From: Podarcis liolepis
Lineage: Eukaryota
DNA: 64,000 bases
Assembly: GCA_965112155.1 (NCBI GenBank)
Contig: OZ218103.1
Strand: one strand, 5' to 3'
Shown: in pieces, positions 5,404 to 52,309 of the stretch
Position numbering within the stretch: the stretch's first letter is position 1
Layout: each line of letters begins with the position of its first letter
Program-made: the position numbers and the translations under genes
The notes under the pieces: generated by a model
Databases searched by the model: none
What the model was told of the DNA's origin: nothing
What the model saw: only the letters and a program-made list of their open reading frames with translations

Positions 5404-5559
<156 letters not shown>

Positions 5560-7769
5560 CTAGGTGCAGAAAAACGAATAGCATTTCAATACAAAAGCCC
5601 CGTCACATCTTTTCATTGCTTTTAACACTCCCTTTGAACACAATGCCATGCAGGAACAAACAAACCAACAAGTCGGACTAAAGAGAATTGTAAACCAGTT
5701 ACAGCAAAAAAAGGGGGGGCACACTAAAATTTAAACCACACACTTACGAGATTTATGGGAAAGCTAGCCTCAATCATGCAATGGGATAAAAATCAGTAGC
5801 TCGGCATAAGAACGGGACCACTTTAGCTAGCCTAATAGGTTTAGAAAGCAATGCTGGCAATAGTCAAGAAAGCAACCTTACAGAAAGGAACACTGTCGTG
5901 GCTATTTGCTTTCTTGACACTGGTGGAGCAGCACAGATTTACCACTGGTTAGGTTGGTGTCACTCTGAGTTTGGACCAAGCCAAATTTCCAACACCTAGC
6001 GGGTTCGGATCACTCAAGAATCATTAGGGATTCTTGCTGGACTTCACAGTTTACTTGCATGCTTCCGTTCTCTGGGACTGTGGCCTAAAATATGGCATGG
6101 ACTATGTCATCACCAGAGCAGAATGCTGAAATAATAAATGTGGGGAATAATTGGTGTTATCTAATTTGCTCTTTGCAGCTCATCATTTAAGAAAATGGGA
6201 ATAAAATGGGTTTAAGGGGTGGAGACGGTGCCTTGGATAGAATAACTTTCCCCCGCATTTGGTGTGTGGACTGTGAGAGACTGCACAGTGGTATAGCATT
6301 ATATTGTCACCACATCATGCCCTCTCGTGGTTTCTTCTATATGTGATGGCATCAGTGTGATTAGTGCTATGGAAACTAGACTACCGTATGTTTCATTCTG
6401 TTCTCTAATAGAGATGAAAGCAGGATCAGGTGGCAACCACTAAACTTTCCTGTAGCCACAGTCCATGAGAACATATTTCGCATGCTGCTGTAAAATGTTA
6501 GTGCCACTGGGATCTCTTGTTTTTCCAATGGTACAATTTGCAGAACAAACACTGTAAAGGAGACCTGGTATCGCATCTCCATGCAACTGTATGGATCACT
6601 CTGACAATTCACAAATTTTCGAATGCCAATCCATCCTTTCTGCTAGGAAAGCCTCCCAGCTTCCTCTCCCACTTTTCTTTTGGGAGTCTTTGAGATGCAG
6701 AGTCGTGTCTCAACTCTCAACCTATTCACACCCCCTCTATAGTAGGGGAAGTGACTTCCCAGCGATTCAAAACAGACAAGTTGTTTTGAGCACATAATTT
6801 CTGGGGTGAACCATAGTGCTAAACTGCATTCTTCTGGCATATACAGATGCTCCTGTATTAAGATTCCAAGCAGCTGCTTCCATTTGGCTCAGTGGTAAAC
6901 TGAGCCGTCTGAACACACCCAACACTTGTGGCAATAAAACTGGGAGGTGGTGCACACTTATGTGGAAGGCAAAAATGTAAACTGAAAGATAAGAGAGCAG
7001 CAAATTGTTTGAAATGGAAGCCACCAAATCTGCAGTTTCTTTCCACCAAGTCACAACTGAAAGAATTCACACTGCATGCACATAGTCACAAATATAAGCT
7101 GAGAAAAGTACTCCAAATGTTCACCTTTACTCTCATGGCACAGTTATGCTGCAGCACTCAGAATTATATATAAAAAAGGAGCAATGTGATGCACTAGCTG
7201 TTGAACTTTGCATCCCACCCTATCCTTGGTGTCTCTGGGCCAGTAACACGTTTCAAAAGATGCTTAACAGGAAAAAAGAAGAGGATTAAAATAGATAAAC
7301 AAAGCCTTCCTCACTAGCTTCCAATTCTAGCTTGAACAGAAAGGATGGACAGCGATTTGGGATAATGCTCTGGGGCCTGGGCCCGGGGGAAACATCATCC
7401 AGGGAGACCGTGCAAGAAGAAATTGTCCACCTATGTTAACGGTCAGGATGGGCACACAAAAGAGAAACAAAAGCTCTAAGAACATACAAGGATAAAACTC
7501 TTTAGGGCCTCGTAAGTCATAATCTGCGTCTCTAATTGTTACTGAAATATCAAAATGTTGGTGTAGGTCTGGGAGCAACAGTAACCCATTCCTATCAAGT
7601 GGTAGTAATCCTCATCTTCATCATTCCCAGGTGACGATGAATCCCCAGGTCTCAGGTAGCGTGCATTATTACTACAGTCAAACTTGGAGAGCACAAAGAC
7701 ATTTCTTGTGGTTGTTATTTTGTAACCTGAGAAAAAAAGTGCACATTCTCTAAATGGAGTTATCAAGTA

Positions 7770-8007
7770 CAGTGGAAGCTTGGTTCCCGAACGGTTTAGT
7801 TGCCGAACAAATTGCCCTCCAAACGCTGCAAACCCAGAAGTGTTCCGGTTTGCAAATGTTTTTCGGAAGTCGAACATCCGACGCGGCTTCTGCTTGAGTG
7901 CAGGAAGCTCCTGCAGCCAACTGGAACCTGCACCTTGGTTTTCGAATGGTTTCAGGAGTCAAACAGGCTCCCGGAACAGATTAAGTTCAAGAACCAAGGT
8001 ACCACCG
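7770..8007. mobile_element. Tc1/mariner(pogo)-type MITE
   Basis: TA|CAGTGGAAGCTTGGTTC ... GAACCAAGGTACCACCG|TA; same family as 1106-1331. Confidence 0.8.
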
Positions 8008-8879
8008 TACTCTTTGGGTCCACCAGTCCAGCAAAAGTCTGCAGACTTTATGTATTGCATTTATATGCCACTTTTCCCTCCAAGGAGCTCCAGGCTAAAA
8101 GGCAGAGAATGGCCCAGAGTCACCCAGTGAGCTTCATGGCCAAATGGGGATTTAAACCTGATCTTCCAGGTCTGATATTTCTGACCCTCCCAGATCATAG
8201 AGCCTACCAATCAACTCAGTCTTTTCTGGATTCAGCTTCAAACACCTTCTCCACATCCCTCCCTATATCCTGGACAGACACTGCCAAACCAGAATTTTAG
8301 CACCCAGGTTGATTAGAGAAATAAATAATGCCATCAGGACACTCCATTTTCATGATGTTGCCCCATACATCCAGCAGAATAGGATGACAGAGTAAAATGC
8401 TACTGGACCTTATAGAAAAGGTCCTGAGAAGATGAGGAGTCACCACCCCTTACCATTCTCTGACTGCCTAGCCTGGACTACTGAAGAGCAGTCCTGCGAA
8501 CACCTGCCTATGCTTGCAATAACGCCAACCTCTCATGTGACATTGCTCTTCAATGACAGGTAATCTGCTGTGGCCATAAACAAAGATTCTGATAGTTAAC
8601 TAGATTGGTCAATACCCAGGACAGAAACTGGAACAGGCCCATGAACTGCCCAAGGGAGGTGGAAACAGCTAACGGACTACTTACACGACCCTAAGGAAAA
8701 AGTAGAAGTTGCAGAATGGGCAGGAAGTCAGTGTTGGGAAGACTACAGATTAATTTCCCCAGTCTTGGAATAGTAGCACAGACAACTTCAGTCTGTGTTA
8801 ATCCCAACTGGCCTATATAAAAACAAGGTTGACTCAAGTAAGCTACCAGAGTTGACGTCCCTCAGCATATCCTCTATAC

Positions 8880-9211
8880 CAGGGGTCTGCAACCCGCGGC
8901 TCCGGAGCCGCATGTGGCTCTTTTACACCTTTGCCGCGGCTCCGGGGCGGATACTAGCGAGGGGAGGAGGCGCATTGTGCGCCCCGAGACTCCCCACTGT
9001 GGCGGGCGCTGTACTGGCTGTGACGTCGCATGGGGGCGGTGCGTGCGTTAGTCACGCACCGTCCCGACGTCACCTTCCCGCCCGCTGTCAGATCGTGGCT
9101 CCGGAGATATATTTGTTTTAAATGTCGCAATGGTTTTGCGGCTCCCAGTTTTTTTCCCCTTCGGAAACGGGTCCAAGTGGCTCTTTTTGTCTTAAAGGTT
9201 GCAGACCCCTG
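8880..9211. mobile_element. Young non-autonomous hAT element
   Basis: Perfect 15-bp TIR CAGGGGTCTGCAACC; perfect 8-bp TSD CTCTATAC (8872-8879 and 9212-9219); very CpG-rich. Confidence 0.93.
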
Positions 9212-12200
9212 CTCTATACCAGTGGATGGTATCAAGTTTTCCATGAAAATTGAGAAAGACCCTCAAACACATTTCAGCCACTCTGATGTCCTCTCTAAGT
9301 TAAGTGCCTGGGTTGCATTTAAGCTTATATTCATAATTATATGTGTATCCTACAACTGTGGAACATTCTTCTCTCTCTCTCTGAACACTGGTACCTTAAG
9401 TCTTTCATCCACATAAATGCACTTACTGTTATTCTCAATGACAATCCAAAGCATTAGAAGTCACTCAGGGCCACTGTGTACATGATGTTTCTTGGACAGT
9501 GATATTGCTTCCATTTGCAGGGGAAAGGCATGTACACTGACCGCCATTGGCAGAAAACACACATACTTAGCTTGGCACATGCAGTGGGAATCACAGCTGC
9601 TTCTGAACACACACAACATGTGGCAAAATAGACAACACGTGCATAATTCACTTATGAATTATGTGCATCATAAGAACCTTGTAGGAAAGTGTAAAGTATG
9701 CAATGTTCCGTAAAAGCGACAATGAACTTGATAAAAAAGACTGAAGGACAACAGGTAATTTTATGGCTGACAGTGCTTGTCCACACATGAGCAGGCACCT
9801 TCTAAATCTCTGCAACTCTCTCTAGGCTTTTAGAGAACCCAACTTGCTCTCCTGGAGACTCCCCCTCCACATATGCCACAAACTTTAGGGTTCTCCTTGA
9901 TTTTTGTAATAGGAAAAGTAAGCTGTTTGGCTTAGGCAGCATTGTCTGCTAATTGCGCTAACTTCCATTAATAATCTTGGCAACATCATGAGACACTTAA
10001 GGAAACTTATGTAATGAATCAAAAGTACTATTACGACAGGAGTTTCAAATAAATAAGCATCATTCTAAGCTTTAACAATGGTCACCTAAGACAAATTAGG
10101 AGGTGGTGTTTATAACGAAGGTTCTTTCCATTTAGCTTCCATTAATTTGTGGGGAGGGGAATGGGGGGGTGTTGATGGATCAATGCCTAGGAAGATTTTG
10201 GGGAAATGTCAACCCAGAGCATGCTGGAATGTGTGCAACACAAGAACCAAAGCACGAAGTTCCATTAACAACAGGCAAAAGATGGGGACATCAATAACAT
10301 CATATGTCATCATGTTATTGTTCCAAGTGTGTTCTGAATACATGAAGGCTCTATAATTTTGCCCAAAGGTTTTCGCAGAAATCAAAACCCTTGCTTTCAA
10401 GCAAACAAAACAAATTAAAACTCCATGGTCTTTGTTTCTGAGAGGTGCTAAAATGCAGTTATGAGAAAGGAAGTTATTATAAAGCATTTAAATCTATTAT
10501 TTTGAGAAAAATAATAGCTCCTTGGTAGGCAAAGAGAATGAAGGTGAACACTGTAGAGTCATTACAGAACTGGCAGAGCAGGTATAACAGCCGTCATGAC
10601 TTATGAAGGGTTCATAATATGTTGTTATGCATGGTAAATATCTGTTGGGTACAAAGTTTTAAGAGGCTCCTTCTGCACATGAACCAAAACCTTTGCCAAC
10701 TGGATTTACTTAGCCAAAACCAACAAAAATTGTCGCCGAATTTGGCCCTGCTGTTATCCACAGGGAAGTGCAAATAGGCCCAAGGCCGTCTGATCAGAGT
10801 CAATAATGCCACATTTTTCATTGCAGTGAAATGGCTAACCCAGCATTTGAATTCGTAACATCAGAGTTGAAGAAGCCAAAAGGCCTACTTAAGTTCAACC
10901 CCCTTTCCATGAGGAAAAACCACTCCTCCACGAACATTTAACTTTAGGAGTTAGCTGGGAAGTTTTTTCCATACAAACCTAATTGGGATTGATTTGTGTG
11001 GCGTTTCATAAACCCCTGAGCTGGCACAAGTCATTGGTAAAATGAAATTATTGGGGGATGCCATGGGAGTTTTAAAAAAAAAATCACCAACAACTTAGTA
11101 GGAACTTACCACAACAGACAATAGTAAAAGTGGGGAGTAGGATCAGCAACCAGGGCAATAGAGGAGAAAACAGAAAGTATTTTGATTAGGGAAAATCCAA
11201 AACAAATAAGCAGCATTTGGCAGCAAATAAACAAAACAAAAAAAGTATTTTAAAAACTGGAACTGGGTAAATAACATGCAATGGGTATTAAAAGGCCACA
11301 CAGAAGGAAAATGTCCAGCAAGAGGAAAGTTCAAGTGCAAAGCAGTGGACAAGAACATAAACCATGGGTGTGTTTTACCATGCAATAGAACATTACTGAA
11401 TAATGTTAAAATTGTAACTGATGACAGGATATACTTCAGGGGTCGATTTAGCATCACACACATTGATCAGAAAAGATGCTCGCAGGCTGTCGTCCCATTA
11501 ATGGAACAGCCACAAACTGCCTTTTGCCATGGTTTTGTGCCAATTTTAACACCGCCAGGGAAACCCTTCGGGGGAGGTGAATCATGGTGCAGTTGACAGA
11601 AGCAACCAAACTGTATGGGTGCCACTTCAAGCAAGCGCTTGAGCTAAATGGAGAGTCTGTGTGACATGAACTTTGCCTTTCGGTTAAAGTGGGCATTGTA
11701 AAAGGCTGCACATGCTTGGGCCAGCTCCCAGGTGGTACAAAAATGCACACCGGCTCCAAAACTGATTTTGGGTCCCCAAGCCTCTCGTTGCAGATGGCGG
11801 GTCATGGAATTAGCACTCTTGATATGACATGCCTTGATGACGTTTTGACTTGTCTGTAATTGCTCTTCTGAACCAAAGCTCTAAACAAGAGAGCCGGACT
11901 CTTATCTGATAGAGCAACATAATCAGAGAAAATCAGAAGCAAAAATCAGCACTTGTACAGCTTTTGGGGAGGTGGAATCCAAAAACTATTCACATATTTA
12001 CTAACAACAACAAGAGAATGCAAAACACACATATTTCAGCTACGTACCAAATTCTTAAAATTCCTTACAAAATTGGTCTGCGTTGGTGTATATAAAGTAT
12101 ATGTATTTGGAAACATTTCTATTGTTTTTAAATGAGGATGGAGGTTTGATTGGGACATATTAGACACAACTGTAAGGAAATTAGAAGGAAATTAGAGGTA

Positions 12201-13707
12201 CTCCCACTGAAATCAGAAGGGCTTACCTACTTAAGTGCCCTGTATCACCAATTATTTCAACGGGAATCTGATTTTGGATGAGTTCACACAGAGCTTTATG
12301 CCATGGTTAACATAAGCCGGGGTTTCTAAACAAAAAGCACACCATGGCTTATTAGCATAATTTGCTTGTGGTTAATAAACCATGATTAAGCTGCTGGGCG
12401 GGGTTCAGGCGAGAAAATTAAACCATGATTTATTAAACCATGTCTTAGTGTTATGTGCAAACCATGCCACTCTCAAGAATGTGCCTGTCCTGCGACAAAA
12501 AATGAAGGTGTCCGCCTTCAAACTTATCTATTTAGTGTCTTGGATATTTGTTGCAGTATTTTCCATTATAACTATTTCTCAACAGACAGCCATCTTAGGC
12601 CGTTGCAGCAAAAAGAACCAAGAATCTTGAGACGTCTGAAAAATAAATGTGCAAGTCTTTAAGGGGCATGATCATCTAAAAGGCAGTTGGGCTGGAAATT
12701 TGCTCAGTATGATGGGCCATATTAGAACCATATCAGTAACTTCCAAAAAGCTAATCAAATAACACAAAAGGGGTCTTTCTGCTTTTTATCAAAGTCTAAC
12801 CACAAATCTCAAAGGCAGAATTCTAAGGTTTCGGAAGGTAGTGGACTGTCCAGGAAGCAAGGGAACTGTACAACCTCTAAGCTTGCTTCATGAAGCTTAG
12901 GAAATCTTTTCAGCAAAACAAAGGCTGAGGCAGAGTCCCTATTTCATATAATTATCTGAAAACCCTCCCACAATGCCAGATGAAACTGGCATTCTTATAC
13001 AAGCCAGGGCAAGGTTGGTGGATTGTATCTCCCACAAGATCTTCAAGGATTATTTTCATGGTTTGGGTCCAGACATACATCAGAATCAGCTGTATTAGGT
13101 CACTGAACAGCTGCAGAGGAATTTGAATTTTGTACATCTCAGAATCAAAACAAAGGACTCTATCTTGGCACCCAGTTGAAGACCATTGACCTAATTCTTA
13201 AGAGATTTGAGAGCTGGGACTAAACTCAAGTTCATTTCACTCTTGCTCAGAGCTTAATGTAGCAAAAGACTATTAATACTACAGTTATACGTTAGGATAC
13301 GAGTGAACGTCTTTCTAACGGGAAACAGTTTTTTGCATTCAAGGTCTTTGAGCATTAGAACTTAAATCGACCCCTGTGTTGGGGGGTGAAAATATGGTAG
13401 GAAGAAATGGTATTCTGTGTCAATATTGATGAGAAATGGAATACAAAAATAACAAACTAGTGATGGTAAAAAGTGGCTCATTCACCAAAGAACCTCATTA
13501 GTGTCATAATACAAATGCATTCATGCACTACCTAAATTGTCTAAAATGACCACAACAGTTTGACTGGTATTTCTTTGGTTAATTAATTCAGGTCAATAGC
13601 AGACAGCAACAGAAATACCCACAGCTAGCACATGTGGGCAAAGCATTGGCAAGAGTCATCATCAGACCAATCTATTAGTGTTCTTTACTAACTAAAACAT
13701 TACCTAC

Positions 13708-13722
13708 CTCCCAGCCAGTACT
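13708..13722 (-). CDS. DOCK7: DOCK7 15-nt microexon (STGWE)
   Basis: Long U-rich tract, then tacacag|AGTACTGGCTGGGAG|gtaggt; phase 0/0; gives KIVHQ-STGWE-RMFGTYF as recalled for vertebrate DOCK7. Invisible to the ORF track. Confidence 0.92.
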
Positions 13723-15333
13723 CTGTGTAATAAAAAGTAAAACAAAAAAACAAAAAACAAAAAGGTATGTCACAGGAACAAGACCAGCTCCTTTTCAAAG
13801 GCCAAAACACAACCATCAACAATAAGGTGCTATCCACTTGAAATGGCTTAGCTGCCACACATTTAAGTTAGCCTTTCGTTTCATAGCCCAGAATCAATAT
13901 TAAGTATGAAGAAGCTCCATTATTGGGCTCTGGAAATCGAACGTAAATGCAAATCCTCTGGCAATCGGAAATTATTACATTGTATTCACCATTTCAGCCT
14001 GAAGTTCAGCCACTGAAACCCAGGTTAGTCCTGCTGGAGGAATTTAGTTTTTGAGCTGAACGGCATGCTGTGGAACACAATTGCAGTTCCCAAGTAATGA
14101 ATGGCAATTCTCATTTTGTGTCATTGTTGTTTATATCCATAAAGCAAAATGCAAACCATTCTTCATTTGTGCTTGAGTTCCAGTTAAAAATAATCATATA
14201 GCATAACCAGTTGTCCAAACAGTATCTCCCTGCTAAATTCAGGAAGTAAAAATGTAACCAAAATGGAAAATAATAGCCTCAATCTAGCAGAACCTCTGGA
14301 GGCCCTGCGCAGATGCAAATGCCCTCATTTATCAGTATATGGCCAACAGCTGGCTGCAATTTTGTGCCCAGGCACCCACTGTTCAGCTTCAAATCCTGGT
14401 TTCAAATGATTAAGGGGGCATGCTTAACATTAGCTTTCATGTTAATTAACCATGGTTAAATTCAGCTGGCGTTAGCCTGAACTGTCTGGGAATGTGCCTT
14501 AAGTTTTGCTTAGAGTCTAATCTGATCCCAGCTGCTGTGGTGCCAACTTGCCCTTGATTTGGCCCCCACATACCATAGAAAATTTAGCTGTTGCATTCAT
14601 CAACATGGAAGAAGCAGGACCGCATTGAGTCACATGCTCTTCTCTCGGTATCCACGTGTGCTGCATGAATGTCTGCAGAGAGGGGTCCTTTGTCTCTATA
14701 ACTATACATGCGAAAACCCCGTCCCACCCCAACATTCGTGCTGTAGATGCAGACAACATGGCAGGGCACAGACTGGACTGTGTGAGATGGGAGAGGGCTG
14801 CTTGCAGCAGCCTCACTTCTTCTTCCCTTGCTGATGAACATGGGAGCTTTAATGCCCCCACTGGGCTCTTCTCTTGGCCCATGGAGCCATCTTTCAGTGA
14901 CACTTCCAGCCCACTTCTCCACACCCAAAAGTAGGGTCATTCATCACTACGCAGCCTCTACAATGCAGGTCATGGTTTGCACAAGCAGAGAGATGTTGCA
15001 GCACCAAAAAAGAGATACCTGCCAAATAGGTAGCTCAAAATGCAAAAGAGTAAAATTAAATCCCCAGGCTGTCCATCTATGTATAGCTTTGGGCTGCAAT
15101 ATTATACCTGCTTACTTACAGCTAAGTAACTCAATGGGAGTAAACAGGATTGCAGTATGAAAACACCTTAACTACAGTTTCACATGTTGTGAAGTCAGTC
15201 TCTAGCCTGGAAAACACAAGTAGAGAATGAATTTGTAGCACACTACATGATAGTGACCTGACTTAGGTGAAAGGCTCTGGAAAAATTAGGACTGATCTGA
15301 TCGCTCTCTTTGCCTAGTTTTGCTGATTTTTTA

Positions 15334-15618
<285 letters not shown>

Positions 15619-22002: not shown

Positions 22003-22612
22003 CATAGCTGTCAAGTGTCCCTTATTTGAAGGGACAGTCCCTTATTCCAGCGCTATGTCCCGCTGCTGTCCCTTATTGATGGATGTCCCTTAAATGTCCC
22101 TTAAATGATGTCCCTTAAATTTCAAAGGAAGCAGCTCCTCTCCCTCCCTCCCTCCCTGCTGGCCAGGGAGGAGGGAGGCTCCAACTGTGTTGCTTGGCTG
22201 TGTTGCTCACCCAATAAGAAGTCTAAGAACGACTGGGGGGTGGAGCTTGCATGCCTTGTGCGTGGCTAGTTAATGCAAGCTGAGAGGGTTTTTGAATGCT
22301 GGACGCCATTTTGTTGCATGTGCTGCTGCAAACATTGCAGTGCAAAGCCAGGCCAGGGAGCCATCTTAAGTTGAGGCTGCATAGGCCTTGTGGTGCATGT
22401 GATTCAGATTCTATTCAGTTGAACCTCTGGTTACAAAGTTGGTTGGACAGTGTTCTCGAAGCTACCAGCATGAGTTTGACCAGACTGCAGGAGGACAAGA
22501 AGACTGGAGTGCCTGGAACAGGTGAGGCTGCTGGTCCCTTATTTTGGCTGCTGGTCCCTTATTTTCAAGGCTGCTGGTCCCTTATTTTCAAATCTGTAAG
22601 TTGACAGCTATG
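22003..22612. mobile_element. Non-autonomous hAT element (610 bp) with subterminal repeats
   Basis: Perfect 12-bp TIR CATAGCTGTCAA; perfect 8-bp TSD GTCAATAC (21995-22002 and 22613-22620); GTCCCTTA repeated at both ends. Confidence 0.92.
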
Positions 22613-49799: not shown

Positions 49800-50288
49800 A
49801 TGAAAATAATACTAGTATTACTCTTTGTAATTTCTCTAGTTGTTGCAACAAGAATAGATGGAGATGAGTTTTCCTTTGTTCCAGAATCTCCTGAGCCAAG
49901 GTTTGCTATGCTACATGATGTGCAATTACTAGCCAACGGGCTGCTCCAGCTTGGGCGTGGCCTTAAAGATTTTGCCATCAAGACCAAAGGCCAAATGGAT
50001 GACATCTTTCAGAAACTTCACCTTTTTGATCAATCTTTTAATGAAATCTCGAAACAAGCCAATGAGATAAAAGAAGACGAGGAACAGCTAAAAAACACTA
50101 CTTCTATGTTGCAAGTCAATAACGAAGAGATAAGGAACATCTCTGTGGAGCTGAATTCCAAGATAGAAATACTTTCACGGGAGAAGATTCAACTTCAGGA
50201 TAAAGTAGGGAAGCTGGAAGAAAAAATAACCAAATTGTTTCAGACCCAGATTGAAAATCAGGAGCCCGAAGAAATTGCAGCCCTTAAA
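49800..50288 (+). CDS. ANGPTL3: ANGPTL3 exon 1 (signal peptide, SE1 LPL-inhibitory motif, coiled coil; 163 aa)
   Basis: ATG at 49800; MKIILVLLFVISLVVA signal peptide; PEPRFAMLHDVQLLANGLLQLGRGLKDF; donor AAA|gtaagt. Confidence 0.97.
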
Positions 50289-52309
50289 GTAAGTAGCAGG
50301 TATGGAATAGATTTAATATTTCCAAAGTTACCTGAAATGGTTTCCAGGCTACTAATGGAATCCAAAGCTCCAAAGTCAATTATGACCTTGTTGCACTAAT
50401 ATCAGTGATGTAAAATATACTTTACCTAGTGGCTGTTTCATACAGTTTTGCTTTGTTTCCAGTGATCAGTAAAATTAAGATGCTAAAATGTTTTTAAAAA
50501 TTAAGATGCTAAATTAGATCACTCTTTGGGGAAGGAATAGCCAAAAATTCCTTTGCAAATCAAGCCAATTTGTGTTCAAGTACAAGTGTATTGGAAAGTA
50601 CAGTACAGTATAGGAAAATGTTCTGATGCCTTAGAGCAGTACTCTCCAGATGTTGCTAGACATCACATTGACTACTGGCTATGCTTGCTGGGGCTGATGG
50701 CAGTTAGGAGACCAACAATATCTGCAGGCACCATGTTGGATACCCCTGCTATGATGATAATAATTTTATTATTTATACCCCGCCCATCTGGCTGGGTTTT
50801 CCAGTGCAAACATTTTCCAGTGCAAACTGCCCTTGTTTATGCACAGGAATGTTTTCCACTTCAAACATTTCCAGGAAAGCCACATCACTGCATTTTGAGG
50901 AATGAAATGAACGTAGCTATCAAGAAAGCAACAACTGGTTCTCTACTGTAAATTTGTTCCTAAATGTTTGTTGTGCATTTATGTAAAATGTATCCTGTGG
51001 TACAAGGATACTTCATGACTTTTTCTTCTTTAATTAGTTTTTTGGAGGAGGATAGTTTTGGATCAACAGCAAACTGCACGGAATATCTAGGGAACTAAAC
51101 AATGGCTCACATATGCTCTGTGCTTTACCAAAAAGCAACCAGAATGAGATGAATTATTTTAACAAAAGCCAGGGATGGTCAGTGTTCTAAACATGTAAGC
51201 CACATGCTTTTGCGCCTAGAATTTTTTTTCTGGAAAGTCCATAAAGGAAGATAATCAGAGTACCCTGGTGGCTGGAACCGCTTCCCTTTCATAACATAAG
51301 ACTATGACATAGGAAAGCCTCATTTATTTTTAAATATTGTACTTTTCACAGCTTGTCCTTACAAAATTTAAAACAGACTGCTGCTTTAAAAATAATAATT
51401 CCACAATCAACACAACGAGTAACTCAGCTGCAACTGATAATGTATCAACCAAGTGCCAAAAGCAACATCAGCAAAGCGGCAAAAGATCACGAAATAATTT
51501 AAGCAAAAAGCCTAGAAAAATGAAATGGTGTTCAGCTGCTGCCCAAACAATAAATGCACAAGCACAAAGCATACATTTTGGGGGCAGGATGTTTCCAAGA
51601 TATGGCAAAACTACTAAGAGCAGTTGGAGCAGGGCCTCTCTGATGACAGTTCACTGAGTAACTTTGTACAAGATGGTCAGGTTTGTATGAGTTGTTGTTG
51701 CTGCTGAAGTAGAAGGAAATGGCTTATGAATTCAGCCAGCCAGCCAGGGGAAAGGAAATAGAAGACAATCGGGACTCAAAGGGTAGGAATGAATTAAGAG
51801 TTTCTCCACGATGGCCAGCAGTGGTGTACACACCAGTACGAGAAGGGTGCATCAGGTGGATTCTCAAAGACTGAATTCCTTAAACTTCCCTTTGGATATC
51901 AAAGGTCCTTTCCAGCAAAATGACTGCTTTTTTAGGGGGTGAGATGGGGTGGGATGCCGAAACAGATAATAAAAGCAAGTCCCTGACAGCAGCTTTGCTT
52001 CAGTTCCAAGAAACCAGCTCTTAATCCATTGCTTTTTTAGGGTAGAGTACAGGATCCATAGATTATGAAGCAAAACAGGATTATTGCATGATTTGACTAT
52101 ACAAAACCATCCCTCCAAATAAGATTGAGGATATACCTTCTACTTCTGTTTAGCATGGTAAGACAACAGCCTTTGGTGAAATTGGCTTGCACTGAGAGGT
52201 GCCCTTCTCCTAGCAGAAAGCCTCCTGCAAGGACCCTAAATCCAAAGAAGCTCTTCTATCAGCAATATTTTACACAAAATCTCTTTTTGTAGCCTACTAG
52301 AGCACATAT

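What the first reader, a model, noticed from the sequence alone, without database searches (positions are those of the whole stretch)
11275..13722. Candidate long-range RNA bridge delivering distal Rbfox sites to the DOCK7 STGWE microexon
Seen: a perfect 14-bp inverted repeat outside any repeat I recognise, CAGGGGTCGATTTA (11437-11450) and TAAATCGACCCCTG (13363-13376), 1.9 kb apart, both keeping a CpG in a CpG-poor intron. In the DOCK7 pre-mRNA the first arm lies about 330 nt downstream of the microexon. The second arm is followed within about 50 and 160 nt by two UGCAUG motifs (plus-strand CATGCA at 11379-11384 and 11275-11280). Established: Rbfox bound downstream activates exons, and base-paired bridges bring distal Rbfox sites close (ENAH, KIF21A). 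Inference: the stem loops out 1.9 kb and places these sites about 400-500 nt from the microexon. Caveat: a 14-mer inverted match somewhere in a 10-kb intron has a rough chance expectation near 0.2, so the case rests on position and conservation.
Basis: partly seen in the sequence, partly recalled or inferred. Interest (0 to 1): 0.85.

Follow-up and report, generated by a model that had tools for sequence, protein, structure and literature searches.

The report
Conserved RNA bridge beside DOCK7 microexon
Two perfectly complementary 14-base stretches in the intron after the 15-base neural microexon of DOCK7, together with the nearby Rbfox-type UGCAUG motifs, are unchanged in a distantly related animal although the 0.8-1.9 kb between them is not conserved. 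This makes a selected long-range RNA stem likely, but its effect on splicing is untested.

Summary
A perfect 14-nt inverted repeat (11437-11450 and 13363-13376) lies in the 8,157-nt DOCK7 intron downstream of the 15-nt STGWE microexon (13708-13722, minus strand). Within this genome alone the repeat is unremarkable: shuffles give 0.24 such pairs per intron.

One distant orthologous DNA copy changed the picture (metagenome contig L001, organism unknown, about 0.71 substitutions per fourfold site).
- Both arms sit in 18-nt runs identical to the window.
- They lie at the inner edges of two alignable blocks of 69% and 76% identity.
- The stretch between the blocks is unalignable and differs in length (757 vs 1,858 nt).
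- All three UGCAUG motifs inside the blocks are conserved, and the arm-to-motif spacing is 52 nt in both.
- About 4e-6 conserved complementary 14-mer pairs are expected by chance.
- In L001 the stem is in the minimum-energy fold (pair probability about 0.9-1.0); in the window it is about 0.11.

A selected long-range duplex acting as a bridge is now the best reading. Still untested: Rbfox binding, any splicing effect and covariation. A conserved proximal UGCAUG at +181 nt weakens the need for delivery.

The parts
13708..13722 (-). 15-nt DOCK7 microexon encoding STGWE
   Evidence: Translation and splice signals read. Identical in L001 at 1578-1592. Known neural, SRRM4-responsive microexon in human (PMC7935315).
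13363..13376 (-). Proximal arm of the stem (RNA 5'-CAGGGGUCGAUUUA-3'), 331 nt downstream of the microexon 5' splice site
   Evidence: Lies in an 18-nt run (13361-13378) identical in L001.
11437..11450 (-). Distal arm of the stem (RNA 5'-UAAAUCGACCCCUG-3')
   Evidence: Lies in an 18-nt run (11434-11451) identical in L001, the second longest identical run in block 1. The translated motif FRGRF is invariant in three further orthologous ORF lineages.
11379..11384 (-). Distal UGCAUG (Rbfox-type motif), 52 nt beyond the distal arm
   Evidence: Conserved in L001 at 341-346 with the same 52-nt spacing.
11275..11280 (-). Second distal UGCAUG, 156 nt beyond the distal arm
   Evidence: Conserved in L001 at 239-244, 154 nt from the arm.
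13522..13527 (-).
   Evidence: Conserved in L001 at 1379-1384.
11160..11487 (-). Conserved distal block (block 1): holds the distal arm and both distal UGCAUG motifs.
   Evidence: blastn against L001 104-445, 71%; 69% in the MAFFT alignment. Single-copy orthologous ORFs P0121, P0122 and P0125.
13346..13849 (-). Conserved proximal block (block 2): microexon, its flanks, the proximal UGCAUG and the proximal arm at its distal edge
   Evidence: blastn against L001 1203-1698, 75%; alignment.
11488..13345 (-). Non-conserved stretch between the two conserved blocks, looped out by the stem (1,858 nt here, 757 nt in L001)
   Evidence: No alignment to L001 446-1202. No Pfam hit in its ORFs, no Rfam family, not repeated within the window.
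11476..11481 (-). Possible second helix, distal side (plus-strand ATGCTC), 25 nt inside the distal arm
   Evidence: Complementary to 13350-13355. Conserved in L001 (7 bp there). Lies at the edge of block 1. RNAalifold on two sequences did not select it.
13350..13355 (-). Possible second helix, proximal side (plus-strand GAGCAT), 7 nt inside the proximal arm

Best explanation
The two arms form a selected long-range RNA helix in the DOCK7 pre-mRNA: 14 Watson-Crick pairs, about -23 kcal/mol. The helix joins a site about 330-345 nt downstream of the STGWE microexon to a site 1.2-2.3 kb downstream. This loops out a freely evolving 0.8-1.9 kb segment and places a conserved distal block of about 330 nt next to the conserved exon-proximal block. 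The distal block carries two UGCAUG motifs, 52 and about 155 nt beyond the distal arm. The most likely consequence is that Rbfox proteins bound at the distal motifs act from an effective distance of about 400-500 nt, adding to a proximal UGCAUG at +181 nt, and promote inclusion of the microexon in Rbfox-expressing cells.

Shown: the sequence, its geometry, its conservation and its thermodynamic feasibility.
Inferred: that the helix forms in vivo, that Rbfox binds the motifs, and that either affects splicing.
For: - The arms, motifs and distances are as described.
- The orthologous locus L001 carries the microexon and three DOCK7 exons. Of 160 compared residues, 156 are identical, and 33 of 72 fourfold sites differ (JC K = 0.71).
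- Both arms are perfectly conserved inside 18-nt identical runs, at the inner edges of two alignable blocks of 69% and 76% identity. The sequence between the blocks is unalignable and 757 vs 1,858 nt long.
- Among perfectly conserved k-mers of the two blocks (k = 8-14) the arms are the only complementary pair. About 4e-6 such 14-mer pairs are expected by chance. For the pre-specified arms, P(both perfectly conserved, given they lie in the blocks) is about 0.007.
- All three UGCAUG motifs in the blocks are conserved (background joint P = 0.024).
- Spacings are kept: arm to motif 52 and 52 nt; 5' splice site to arm 331 and 344 nt.
- In L001 the stem is in the MFE structure with pair probabilities of 0.89-1.0.
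- The duplex energy of -23.1 kcal/mol compares with -19.8 for the core of the validated ENAH bridge.
- The left-arm codons FRGRF are invariant in three more single-copy orthologous ORF lineages.
- UGCAUG is enriched downstream of alternative microexons in mammals (PMC4317164).
Against: - There is no covariation: both arms are invariant, so base pairing is not distinguished from sequence constraint on each arm.
- Only one DNA-level orthologue was available, its organism is unknown, and it is a metagenome contig.
- In the window's own 2.5-kb context the stem is not in the MFE. Its pair probability is about 0.11, and forcing it costs +5.5 kcal/mol.
- At least six other proximal-to-distal duplexes in the intron have equal or better hybridisation energy.
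- A conserved UGCAUG already lies 181 nt from the exon, so delivery of distal sites is not needed for Rbfox responsiveness.
- The exon-side arm is 331 nt from the exon, not within 50 nt as in the catalogue of candidate bridges.
- The human microexon is documented as SRRM4-dependent. I found no paper or catalogue entry linking DOCK7 to Rbfox bridges or long-range structure.
Confidence: 0.45

Rival explanations
1. The conserved helix is real and selected, but its job is not Rbfox delivery. It might compact the intron so that other elements of the distal block reach the microexon. It might influence the choice at the downstream exon. Or it might be a binding platform for a double-stranded-RNA-binding protein or helicase.
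For: - The conservation evidence supports the helix, not the effector.
- The arm is the best conserved element of block 1 apart from one run at its edge, and is better conserved than the UGCAUG motifs.
- A proximal UGCAUG makes the distal ones partly redundant.
- The 18-nt identical runs include unpaired flanking bases, which hints at recognition beyond pairing.
DGK is indeed in frame upstream of that exon.
Against: All three UGCAUG motifs and the exact 52-nt arm-to-motif spacing are conserved. The Rbfox model explains this most simply.
Confidence: 0.2
2. The two arms are two copies of one long DNA motif in opposite orientation, for example sites of a sequence-specific DNA-binding protein in an intronic enhancer or boundary. 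On this reading the constraint acts on DNA, not on RNA pairing.
For: - Both arms are invariant, without the G-U or compensatory changes that an RNA stem would tolerate.
- The arm loosely resembles the CTCF core (from my own recollection of the motif; 9 of 12 positions, with a mismatch at a strongly constrained G). This is a lead, not a test.
- DOCK7 introns surround ANGPTL3 (exon 1 at 49800-50399), so regulatory DNA is plausible here.
Against: - Transcription-factor sites are normally degenerate. Two sites identical at all 14 positions in two lineages separated by K about 0.7 are not expected.
- The arms sit exactly where the alignable blocks end and a variable loop begins, and a further conserved 6-7-bp complementarity lies just inside them. 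That is the anatomy of a stem.
- The spacing to UGCAUG is conserved on the transcribed strand.
Confidence: 0.12
3. The complementarity is a coincidence between two independently conserved intronic elements, and no helix matters.
For: - Within one genome a perfect 14-mer inverted pair is expected 0.24 times per intron of this size.
- Published catalogues of conserved complementary regions have false-discovery rates of 10% to over 50% (PMC8052449).
- The predicted pair probability in the window is only 0.11.
Against: - The expected number of complementary pairs among perfectly conserved 14-mers of the two blocks is about 4e-6.
- No other conserved complementary pair exists even at k = 8.
- The stem dominates the predicted fold of L001.
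Confidence: 0.08
4. The arms are the neutral remains of the terminal inverted repeats of a hAT-type DNA transposon that spans 11437-13376.
For: - The arms begin with CAGGGGTC at their outer ends. This is the same 8-mer and geometry as the inverted repeats of a clean 332-bp hAT-type MITE in the same intron (8880-9211, perfect 8-bp target-site duplication CTCTATAC).
- The interior is not conserved.
- First-reader notes report many hAT MITEs in this genome (unchecked).
Against: - There is no target-site duplication: the flanks are ATATACTT and TGTTGGGG.
- The interior holds no transposase remnant and has no second copy in the window.
- Orthologous ORFs are single-copy.
- Homology with the orthologues runs straight through the arm on both sides.
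- Perfect retention of 28 nt with two CpGs across K about 0.7 is incompatible with neutrality.
- An ancient exapted transposon end remains possible as an origin only.
Confidence: 0.03

Closest known systems
Rbfox 'RNA bridges' of ENAH and KIF21A (Lovci et al. 2013, as summarised in PMC10790352 and PMC8052449)
   Same: - Conserved UGCAUG motifs lie more than 1 kb downstream of an alternative exon.
- A conserved complementary pair links the motif region to the exon-proximal intron.
- The duplex energy is similar: -23.1 kcal/mol here against -19.8 for the ENAH core.
   Different: - The exon is a 15-nt microexon.
- The exon-side arm is 331 nt from the exon rather than adjacent to it.
- A conserved proximal UGCAUG also exists.
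- No CLIP, knock-down or mutagenesis data exist for this locus.
- I could not read the original paper, because PMC3918504 is not held.
[quoted passage not shown] 2021, PMC8052449)
   Same: Defined the same way: complementary segments of 10 nt or more, both inside conserved intronic sequence, with the loop free to vary.
   Different: - DOCK7 does not occur in the paper's text or in its five held supplementary files, including the list of 296 candidate bridges.
- That catalogue is for human. This case was found in a non-mammalian genome and one unknown orthologue.
- The catalogue's bridge rule (exon and protein site each within 50 nt of an arm) is not met on the exon side.
Neural microexon programme driven by SRRM4/SRRM3, with RBFOX and PTBP1 inputs
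   Same: - The same 15-nt DOCK7 microexon is neural and SRRM4-responsive in human (PMC7935315).
- It is conserved in zebrafish (PMC12626424) and chicken (PMC12871342).
- UGCAUG is enriched downstream of alternative microexons (PMC4317164).
   Different: - Those studies concern elements close to the exon. None describes a long-range helix.
- Read directly, there is no UGC within about 75 nt upstream of the 3' splice site here.
hAT-superfamily MITEs and their terminal inverted repeats
   Same: An outward-facing CAGGGGTC terminus identical to that of a hAT-type MITE 2.2 kb away.
   Different: There is no target-site duplication, the locus is single-copy, and it is conserved across K about 0.7. 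It is not a member. At most it is an ancient exapted end.

Membership tests
Rbfox RNA bridge (ENAH/KIF21A type) | Conserved (U)GCAUG motif(s) more than 500 nt from the regulated exon | tested here: met
   UGCAUG at 2,324 and 2,428 nt downstream of the 5' splice site. Both are conserved in L001.
Rbfox RNA bridge (ENAH/KIF21A type) | Conserved complementary segments linking the motif region to the exon-proximal intron | tested here: met
   A 14/14 complementary pair, with both arms identical in L001 at K about 0.71 and a non-conserved loop. Chance expectation is 4e-6. One orthologue only.
Rbfox RNA bridge (ENAH/KIF21A type) | Compensatory (covarying) substitutions that keep the pairing | tested here: inconclusive
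   No substitution occurs in either arm in the two sequences. Protein-level orthologues show only that FRGRF is kept.
Rbfox RNA bridge (ENAH/KIF21A type) | Rbfox occupancy at the distal site (CLIP) | not testable with these tools
Rbfox RNA bridge (ENAH/KIF21A type) | Exon inclusion depends on the stem (single-arm loss, compensatory rescue) | not testable with these tools
   This needs an experiment.
Candidate RNA bridge by the rule of PMC8052449 | Protein site within 50 nt of one arm and exon within 50 nt of the other | tested here: not met
   The motif is 52 nt from the distal arm (borderline). The exon is 331 nt from the proximal arm.
hAT transposon / MITE | 8-bp target-site duplication flanking the terminal inverted repeats | tested here: not met
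   The flanks are ATATACTT and TGTTGGGG. The positive control at 8880-9211 shows a perfect CTCTATAC duplication.
hAT transposon / MITE | Multiple copies in the genome, or transposase remnants | tested here: not met
   No second copy in the window, no Pfam hit, and orthologous ORFs sit on 1-6 contigs each.

The most novel reading that the evidence does not exclude
The arms are the exapted terminal inverted repeats of an ancient hAT-type transposon that landed between the microexon-proximal block and a once-adjacent Rbfox enhancer block. Selection has since kept the two ends complementary, so that the decaying transposon body is looped out of the pre-mRNA and the enhancer stays functionally close. 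This would explain three things: the hAT-like CAGGGGTC termini facing outward, the position of the arms at the borders between conserved and non-conserved sequence, and the free variation of loop length.
Probability: 0.1. Interest if true: 0.8.

Novelty: new member of a known kind. Interest (0 to 1): 0.6.

Why it matters
The DOCK7 STGWE microexon belongs to the conserved neural microexon programme and sits in the DHR-2 exchange-factor domain. How such tiny exons are recognised is an open problem, and known inputs lie close to the exon.

A deeply conserved 14-bp helix that ties a distal, UGCAUG-bearing block to the exon-proximal block would add a long-range structural layer to microexon control. 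It would also give a compact, directly testable case: two 14-nt arms and three motifs.

I found no description of it in the papers searched. The case also shows that a within-genome repeat at chance level can be lifted to significance by a single distant orthologue.

Tried and rejected
- **Read laying.** So I have no read-level data on copy number, variants in the close relatives or microexon usage.
- **The look-up of sequencing runs.** It showed only that seven closely related coded organisms hold the whole 2.8 kb (31-mer share 0.74-1.00). That is too shallow to be informative.
- **Transposon hypothesis.** This was my leading idea up. I pursued it by TSD scan (31), self-BLAST, Pfam and mismatch searches (32). 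I rejected it as a neutral relic after the orthologue comparison.
- **CpG and GC profile.** CpG-free zones flank both arms, but a similar 457-nt gap lies inside the loop, so this is not evidence.
- **Rfam.** Nothing found.
- **The search for homologous proteins.** With the left-arm ORF no candidate shared the required words. With an L001 ORF over the right arm it returned only the same species (P0130).
- **Relaxed tblastn of orthologous ORFs against the loop.** This gave only noise. Apparent matches to the right arm at three inconsistent positions were discarded.
- **Whole-block duplexfold (second part).** Not meaningful, and ignored.
- **PCCR supplements and literature.** No DOCK7 entry.
- **Scans not run.** I did not scan genome contigs or viral contigs for the arm pattern. 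Any vertebrate hit there would most likely be human contamination, which I must not handle.

A local tblastn in the sandbox printed a translated match touching 11130-11155. The findings look-up widened my range on its own to 9775-15222 and so included them; it returned nothing.
- I did not take L001 for human. My grounds: GC 46% and CpG o/e 0.48; compact introns; and an intron read-through of the ORF group that, unlike the high-contig-count exon-only hits, still resembles this window. Its organism is nevertheless unknown.
- I fetched neither P0111 (labelled Homo sapiens) nor the high-count clusters.
Full report
**What is in the window.**
The inverted repeat is real and exact. CAGGGGTCGATTTA lies at 11437-11450 and its reverse complement at 13363-13376. 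Nothing else in the 64 kb matches at up to two mismatches, and the flanks do not extend the pairing.

The host gene is DOCK7 on the minus strand. An upstream exon ends near 15487 (...KIVHQ). The 15-nt microexon encoding STGWE is at 13708-13722, with a long pyrimidine tract, an AG acceptor and a GTAGGT donor. The next exon starts at 5550 ([13 protein letters not shown]...). The downstream intron is therefore 5551-13707, 8,157 nt. ANGPTL3 exon 1 lies on the other strand at 49800-50399, as expected for this locus.

In the RNA, the proximal arm starts 331 nt after the 5' splice site. The distal arm lies 1,912 nt further on, and UGCAUG motifs follow it after 52 and 156 nt. Each arm holds a CpG, in an intron whose CpG observed/expected ratio is 0.25-0.35.

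**How special is it within this genome?**
Not very. Dinucleotide-preserving shuffles of the intron give 0.24 perfect inverted pairs of 14 nt or more, with P(at least one) = 0.21.

The duplex is worth -23.1 kcal/mol. In a 2.5-kb fold of the RNA, however, it is absent from the minimum-energy structure. Its pair probability is about 0.11, and forcing it costs 5.5 kcal/mol. A scan of 40-nt windows found six other duplexes between the first 600 nt of the intron and the rest with equal or better hybridisation energy.

UGCAUG occurs eight times on the sense strand of the intron. The density across the whole window predicts about four.

**A transposon detour.**
The only other inverted pair of 14 nt or more in the intron (8880-8894 with 9197-9211) belongs to a 332-bp element with a perfect 8-bp target-site duplication, which is typical of a hAT-type MITE. 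Its ends start with the same 8-mer, CAGGGGTC, facing outward exactly as in the finding. A second clean element with an 8-bp duplication is at 22003-22612. Earlier first-reader notes mention many hAT MITEs in this genome (unchecked).

For a while I therefore held the arms to be transposon ends. Several results count against that:
- there is no target-site duplication (ATATACTT against TGTTGGGG);
- there is no second copy in the window;
- there is no transposase remnant;
- there is no Rfam family.

**Getting an orthologue.**

I then used spurious ORFs as handles. The ORF at 11276-11593 (+), which spans both distal motifs and the left arm, found three Logan ORF clusters: P0121, P0122 and P0125, at 45-57% identity. 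Each sits on one to six contigs, so they are single-copy. One cluster member sits on a contig of 22,786 nt, the same length as the contig carrying a DOCK7 upstream-exon ORF (P0003). This points to orthology. All of them keep NHGC.LPC (the 11379 motif region) and FRGRF (the arm).

An alignment of these ORFs, used to scan JGI metagenome contigs, returned one locus, L001 (5,504 nt). L001 carries the microexon at 1578-1592 and three DOCK7 exons collinear with the window. Its organism is unknown. I did not take it for human, for the reasons given under Tried and rejected.

**The conservation test.**
Over three exons, 156 of 160 residues are identical, but 33 of 72 fourfold-degenerate sites differ. 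That gives a Jukes-Cantor distance of 0.71, so neutral sequence should no longer align.

Accordingly, only two intronic blocks align:
- window 11160-11487 with L001 104-445 (69-71% identity);
- window 13346-13849 with L001 1203-1698 (75-76% identity).

Between them, 1,858 nt in the window face 757 unalignable nt in L001.

Both arms are intact in L001 (399-412 and 1220-1233). Each sits in an 18-nt run of perfect identity, close to the inner edge of its block.

The blocks contain 15 and 50 perfectly conserved 14-mers. The arms are the only complementary pair among conserved k-mers, even at k = 8, and about 4e-6 such 14-mer pairs are expected by chance.

All three UGCAUG motifs inside the blocks are conserved (background joint probability 0.024). 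The spacings are kept: arm to first motif 52 and 52 nt, arm to second motif 156 and 154 nt, and splice site to proximal arm 331 and 344 nt. The linear distance from exon to distal motifs thus varies twofold (2.3 against 1.2 kb), while the distance through the stem stays near 400 nt.

In L001's 1.38-kb RNA the stem is part of the minimum-energy fold, with pair probabilities of 0.89-1.0.

A further 6-7-bp complementarity lies just inside the arms, at the very ends of the alignable blocks (ATGCTC at 11476-11481 with GAGCAT at 13350-13355). It is also conserved. RNAalifold on two sequences did not select it, so I list it only as a candidate.

**Interpretation.**
Perfect retention of two complementary 14-mers, each with a CpG, across about 0.7 substitutions per neutral site rules out both a chance repeat and a neutral transposon relic. 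This is all the more so because they sit at the borders of a freely evolving loop.

The simplest explanation is a selected long-range RNA helix, the known kind of element called an RNA bridge or pair of conserved complementary regions (PMC10790352; PMC8052449).

That last step is inference. There are no binding data and no functional test. There is no covariation, because the arms are invariant. A conserved UGCAUG 181 nt from the exon means the exon could respond to Rbfox without any bridge. The human orthologous microexon is documented as SRRM4-responsive (PMC7935315).

The bridge may therefore serve another purpose, or the constraint might act on DNA. I rate these rivals at 0.20 and 0.12. 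I rate the Rbfox-bridge reading at 0.45.

The hAT-like terminus remains unexplained. An ancient exapted transposon end is possible but unsupported by a target-site duplication.

**Novelty and limits.**
I found no paper or catalogue entry on a long-range structure in DOCK7, so this would be a new member of a known kind.

The main limits are these:
- one DNA-level orthologue, of unknown species;
- protein-level support only for the left arm in three further lineages;
- no reads;

Two inadvertent contacts with those places are disclosed under Tried and rejected.

Noticed in passing
window 8880-9211: A 332-bp hAT-type MITE with 15-nt terminal inverted repeats (CAGGGGTCTGCAACC) and a perfect 8-bp target-site duplication CTCTATAC (8872-8879 and 9212-9219). 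It is very CpG-rich compared with the intron. Its terminus shares 8 nt with the conserved arms.
   Followed up: partly
window 22003-22612: A second element of 610 bp with perfect 10-nt inverted ends or longer (CATAGCTGTC) and a perfect 8-bp flanking duplication GTCAATAC. Probably another hAT-type MITE.
   Followed up: no
window 13522-13527: A UGCAUG on the RNA strand only 181 nt downstream of the microexon, conserved in L001 within a 13-nt identical run. It is directly preceded in the RNA by UGCAUU-like sequence.
   Followed up: yes
window 11476-11481 and 13350-13355: A 6-bp complementarity (7 bp in L001) just inside the two arms, at the very ends of the alignable blocks. It could extend the stem across an asymmetric internal loop.
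   Followed up: partly
window 13723-13800: The roughly 75 nt upstream of the microexon's 3' splice site are a long U-rich tract with no UGC triplet. That is unusual for microexons described as SRRM4-dependent. The first 18 nt are identical in L001.
   Followed up: no
window 5551-5559: DGK is in frame immediately upstream of the downstream exon (…DGK|RMFGTYF…).
   Followed up: no
window 12285-12470, 14450-14473, 14971-14983: Short repeated AAACCATG-containing motifs occur in the loop. They have partial direct and inverted matches in the upstream intron (families D1, D3, D4 and I8). They may be remains of a short interspersed repeat.
   Followed up: no
window 49800-50399 (+): ANGPTL3 exon 1 (signal peptide and coiled-coil start), nested antisense in a DOCK7 intron. 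This is the conserved vertebrate arrangement.
   Followed up: no
   Followed up: no
window 5551-13707: UGCAUG occurs 8 times on the sense strand of the downstream intron and 3 times on the antisense strand. There is none in the 1.77-kb upstream intron.
   Followed up: partly
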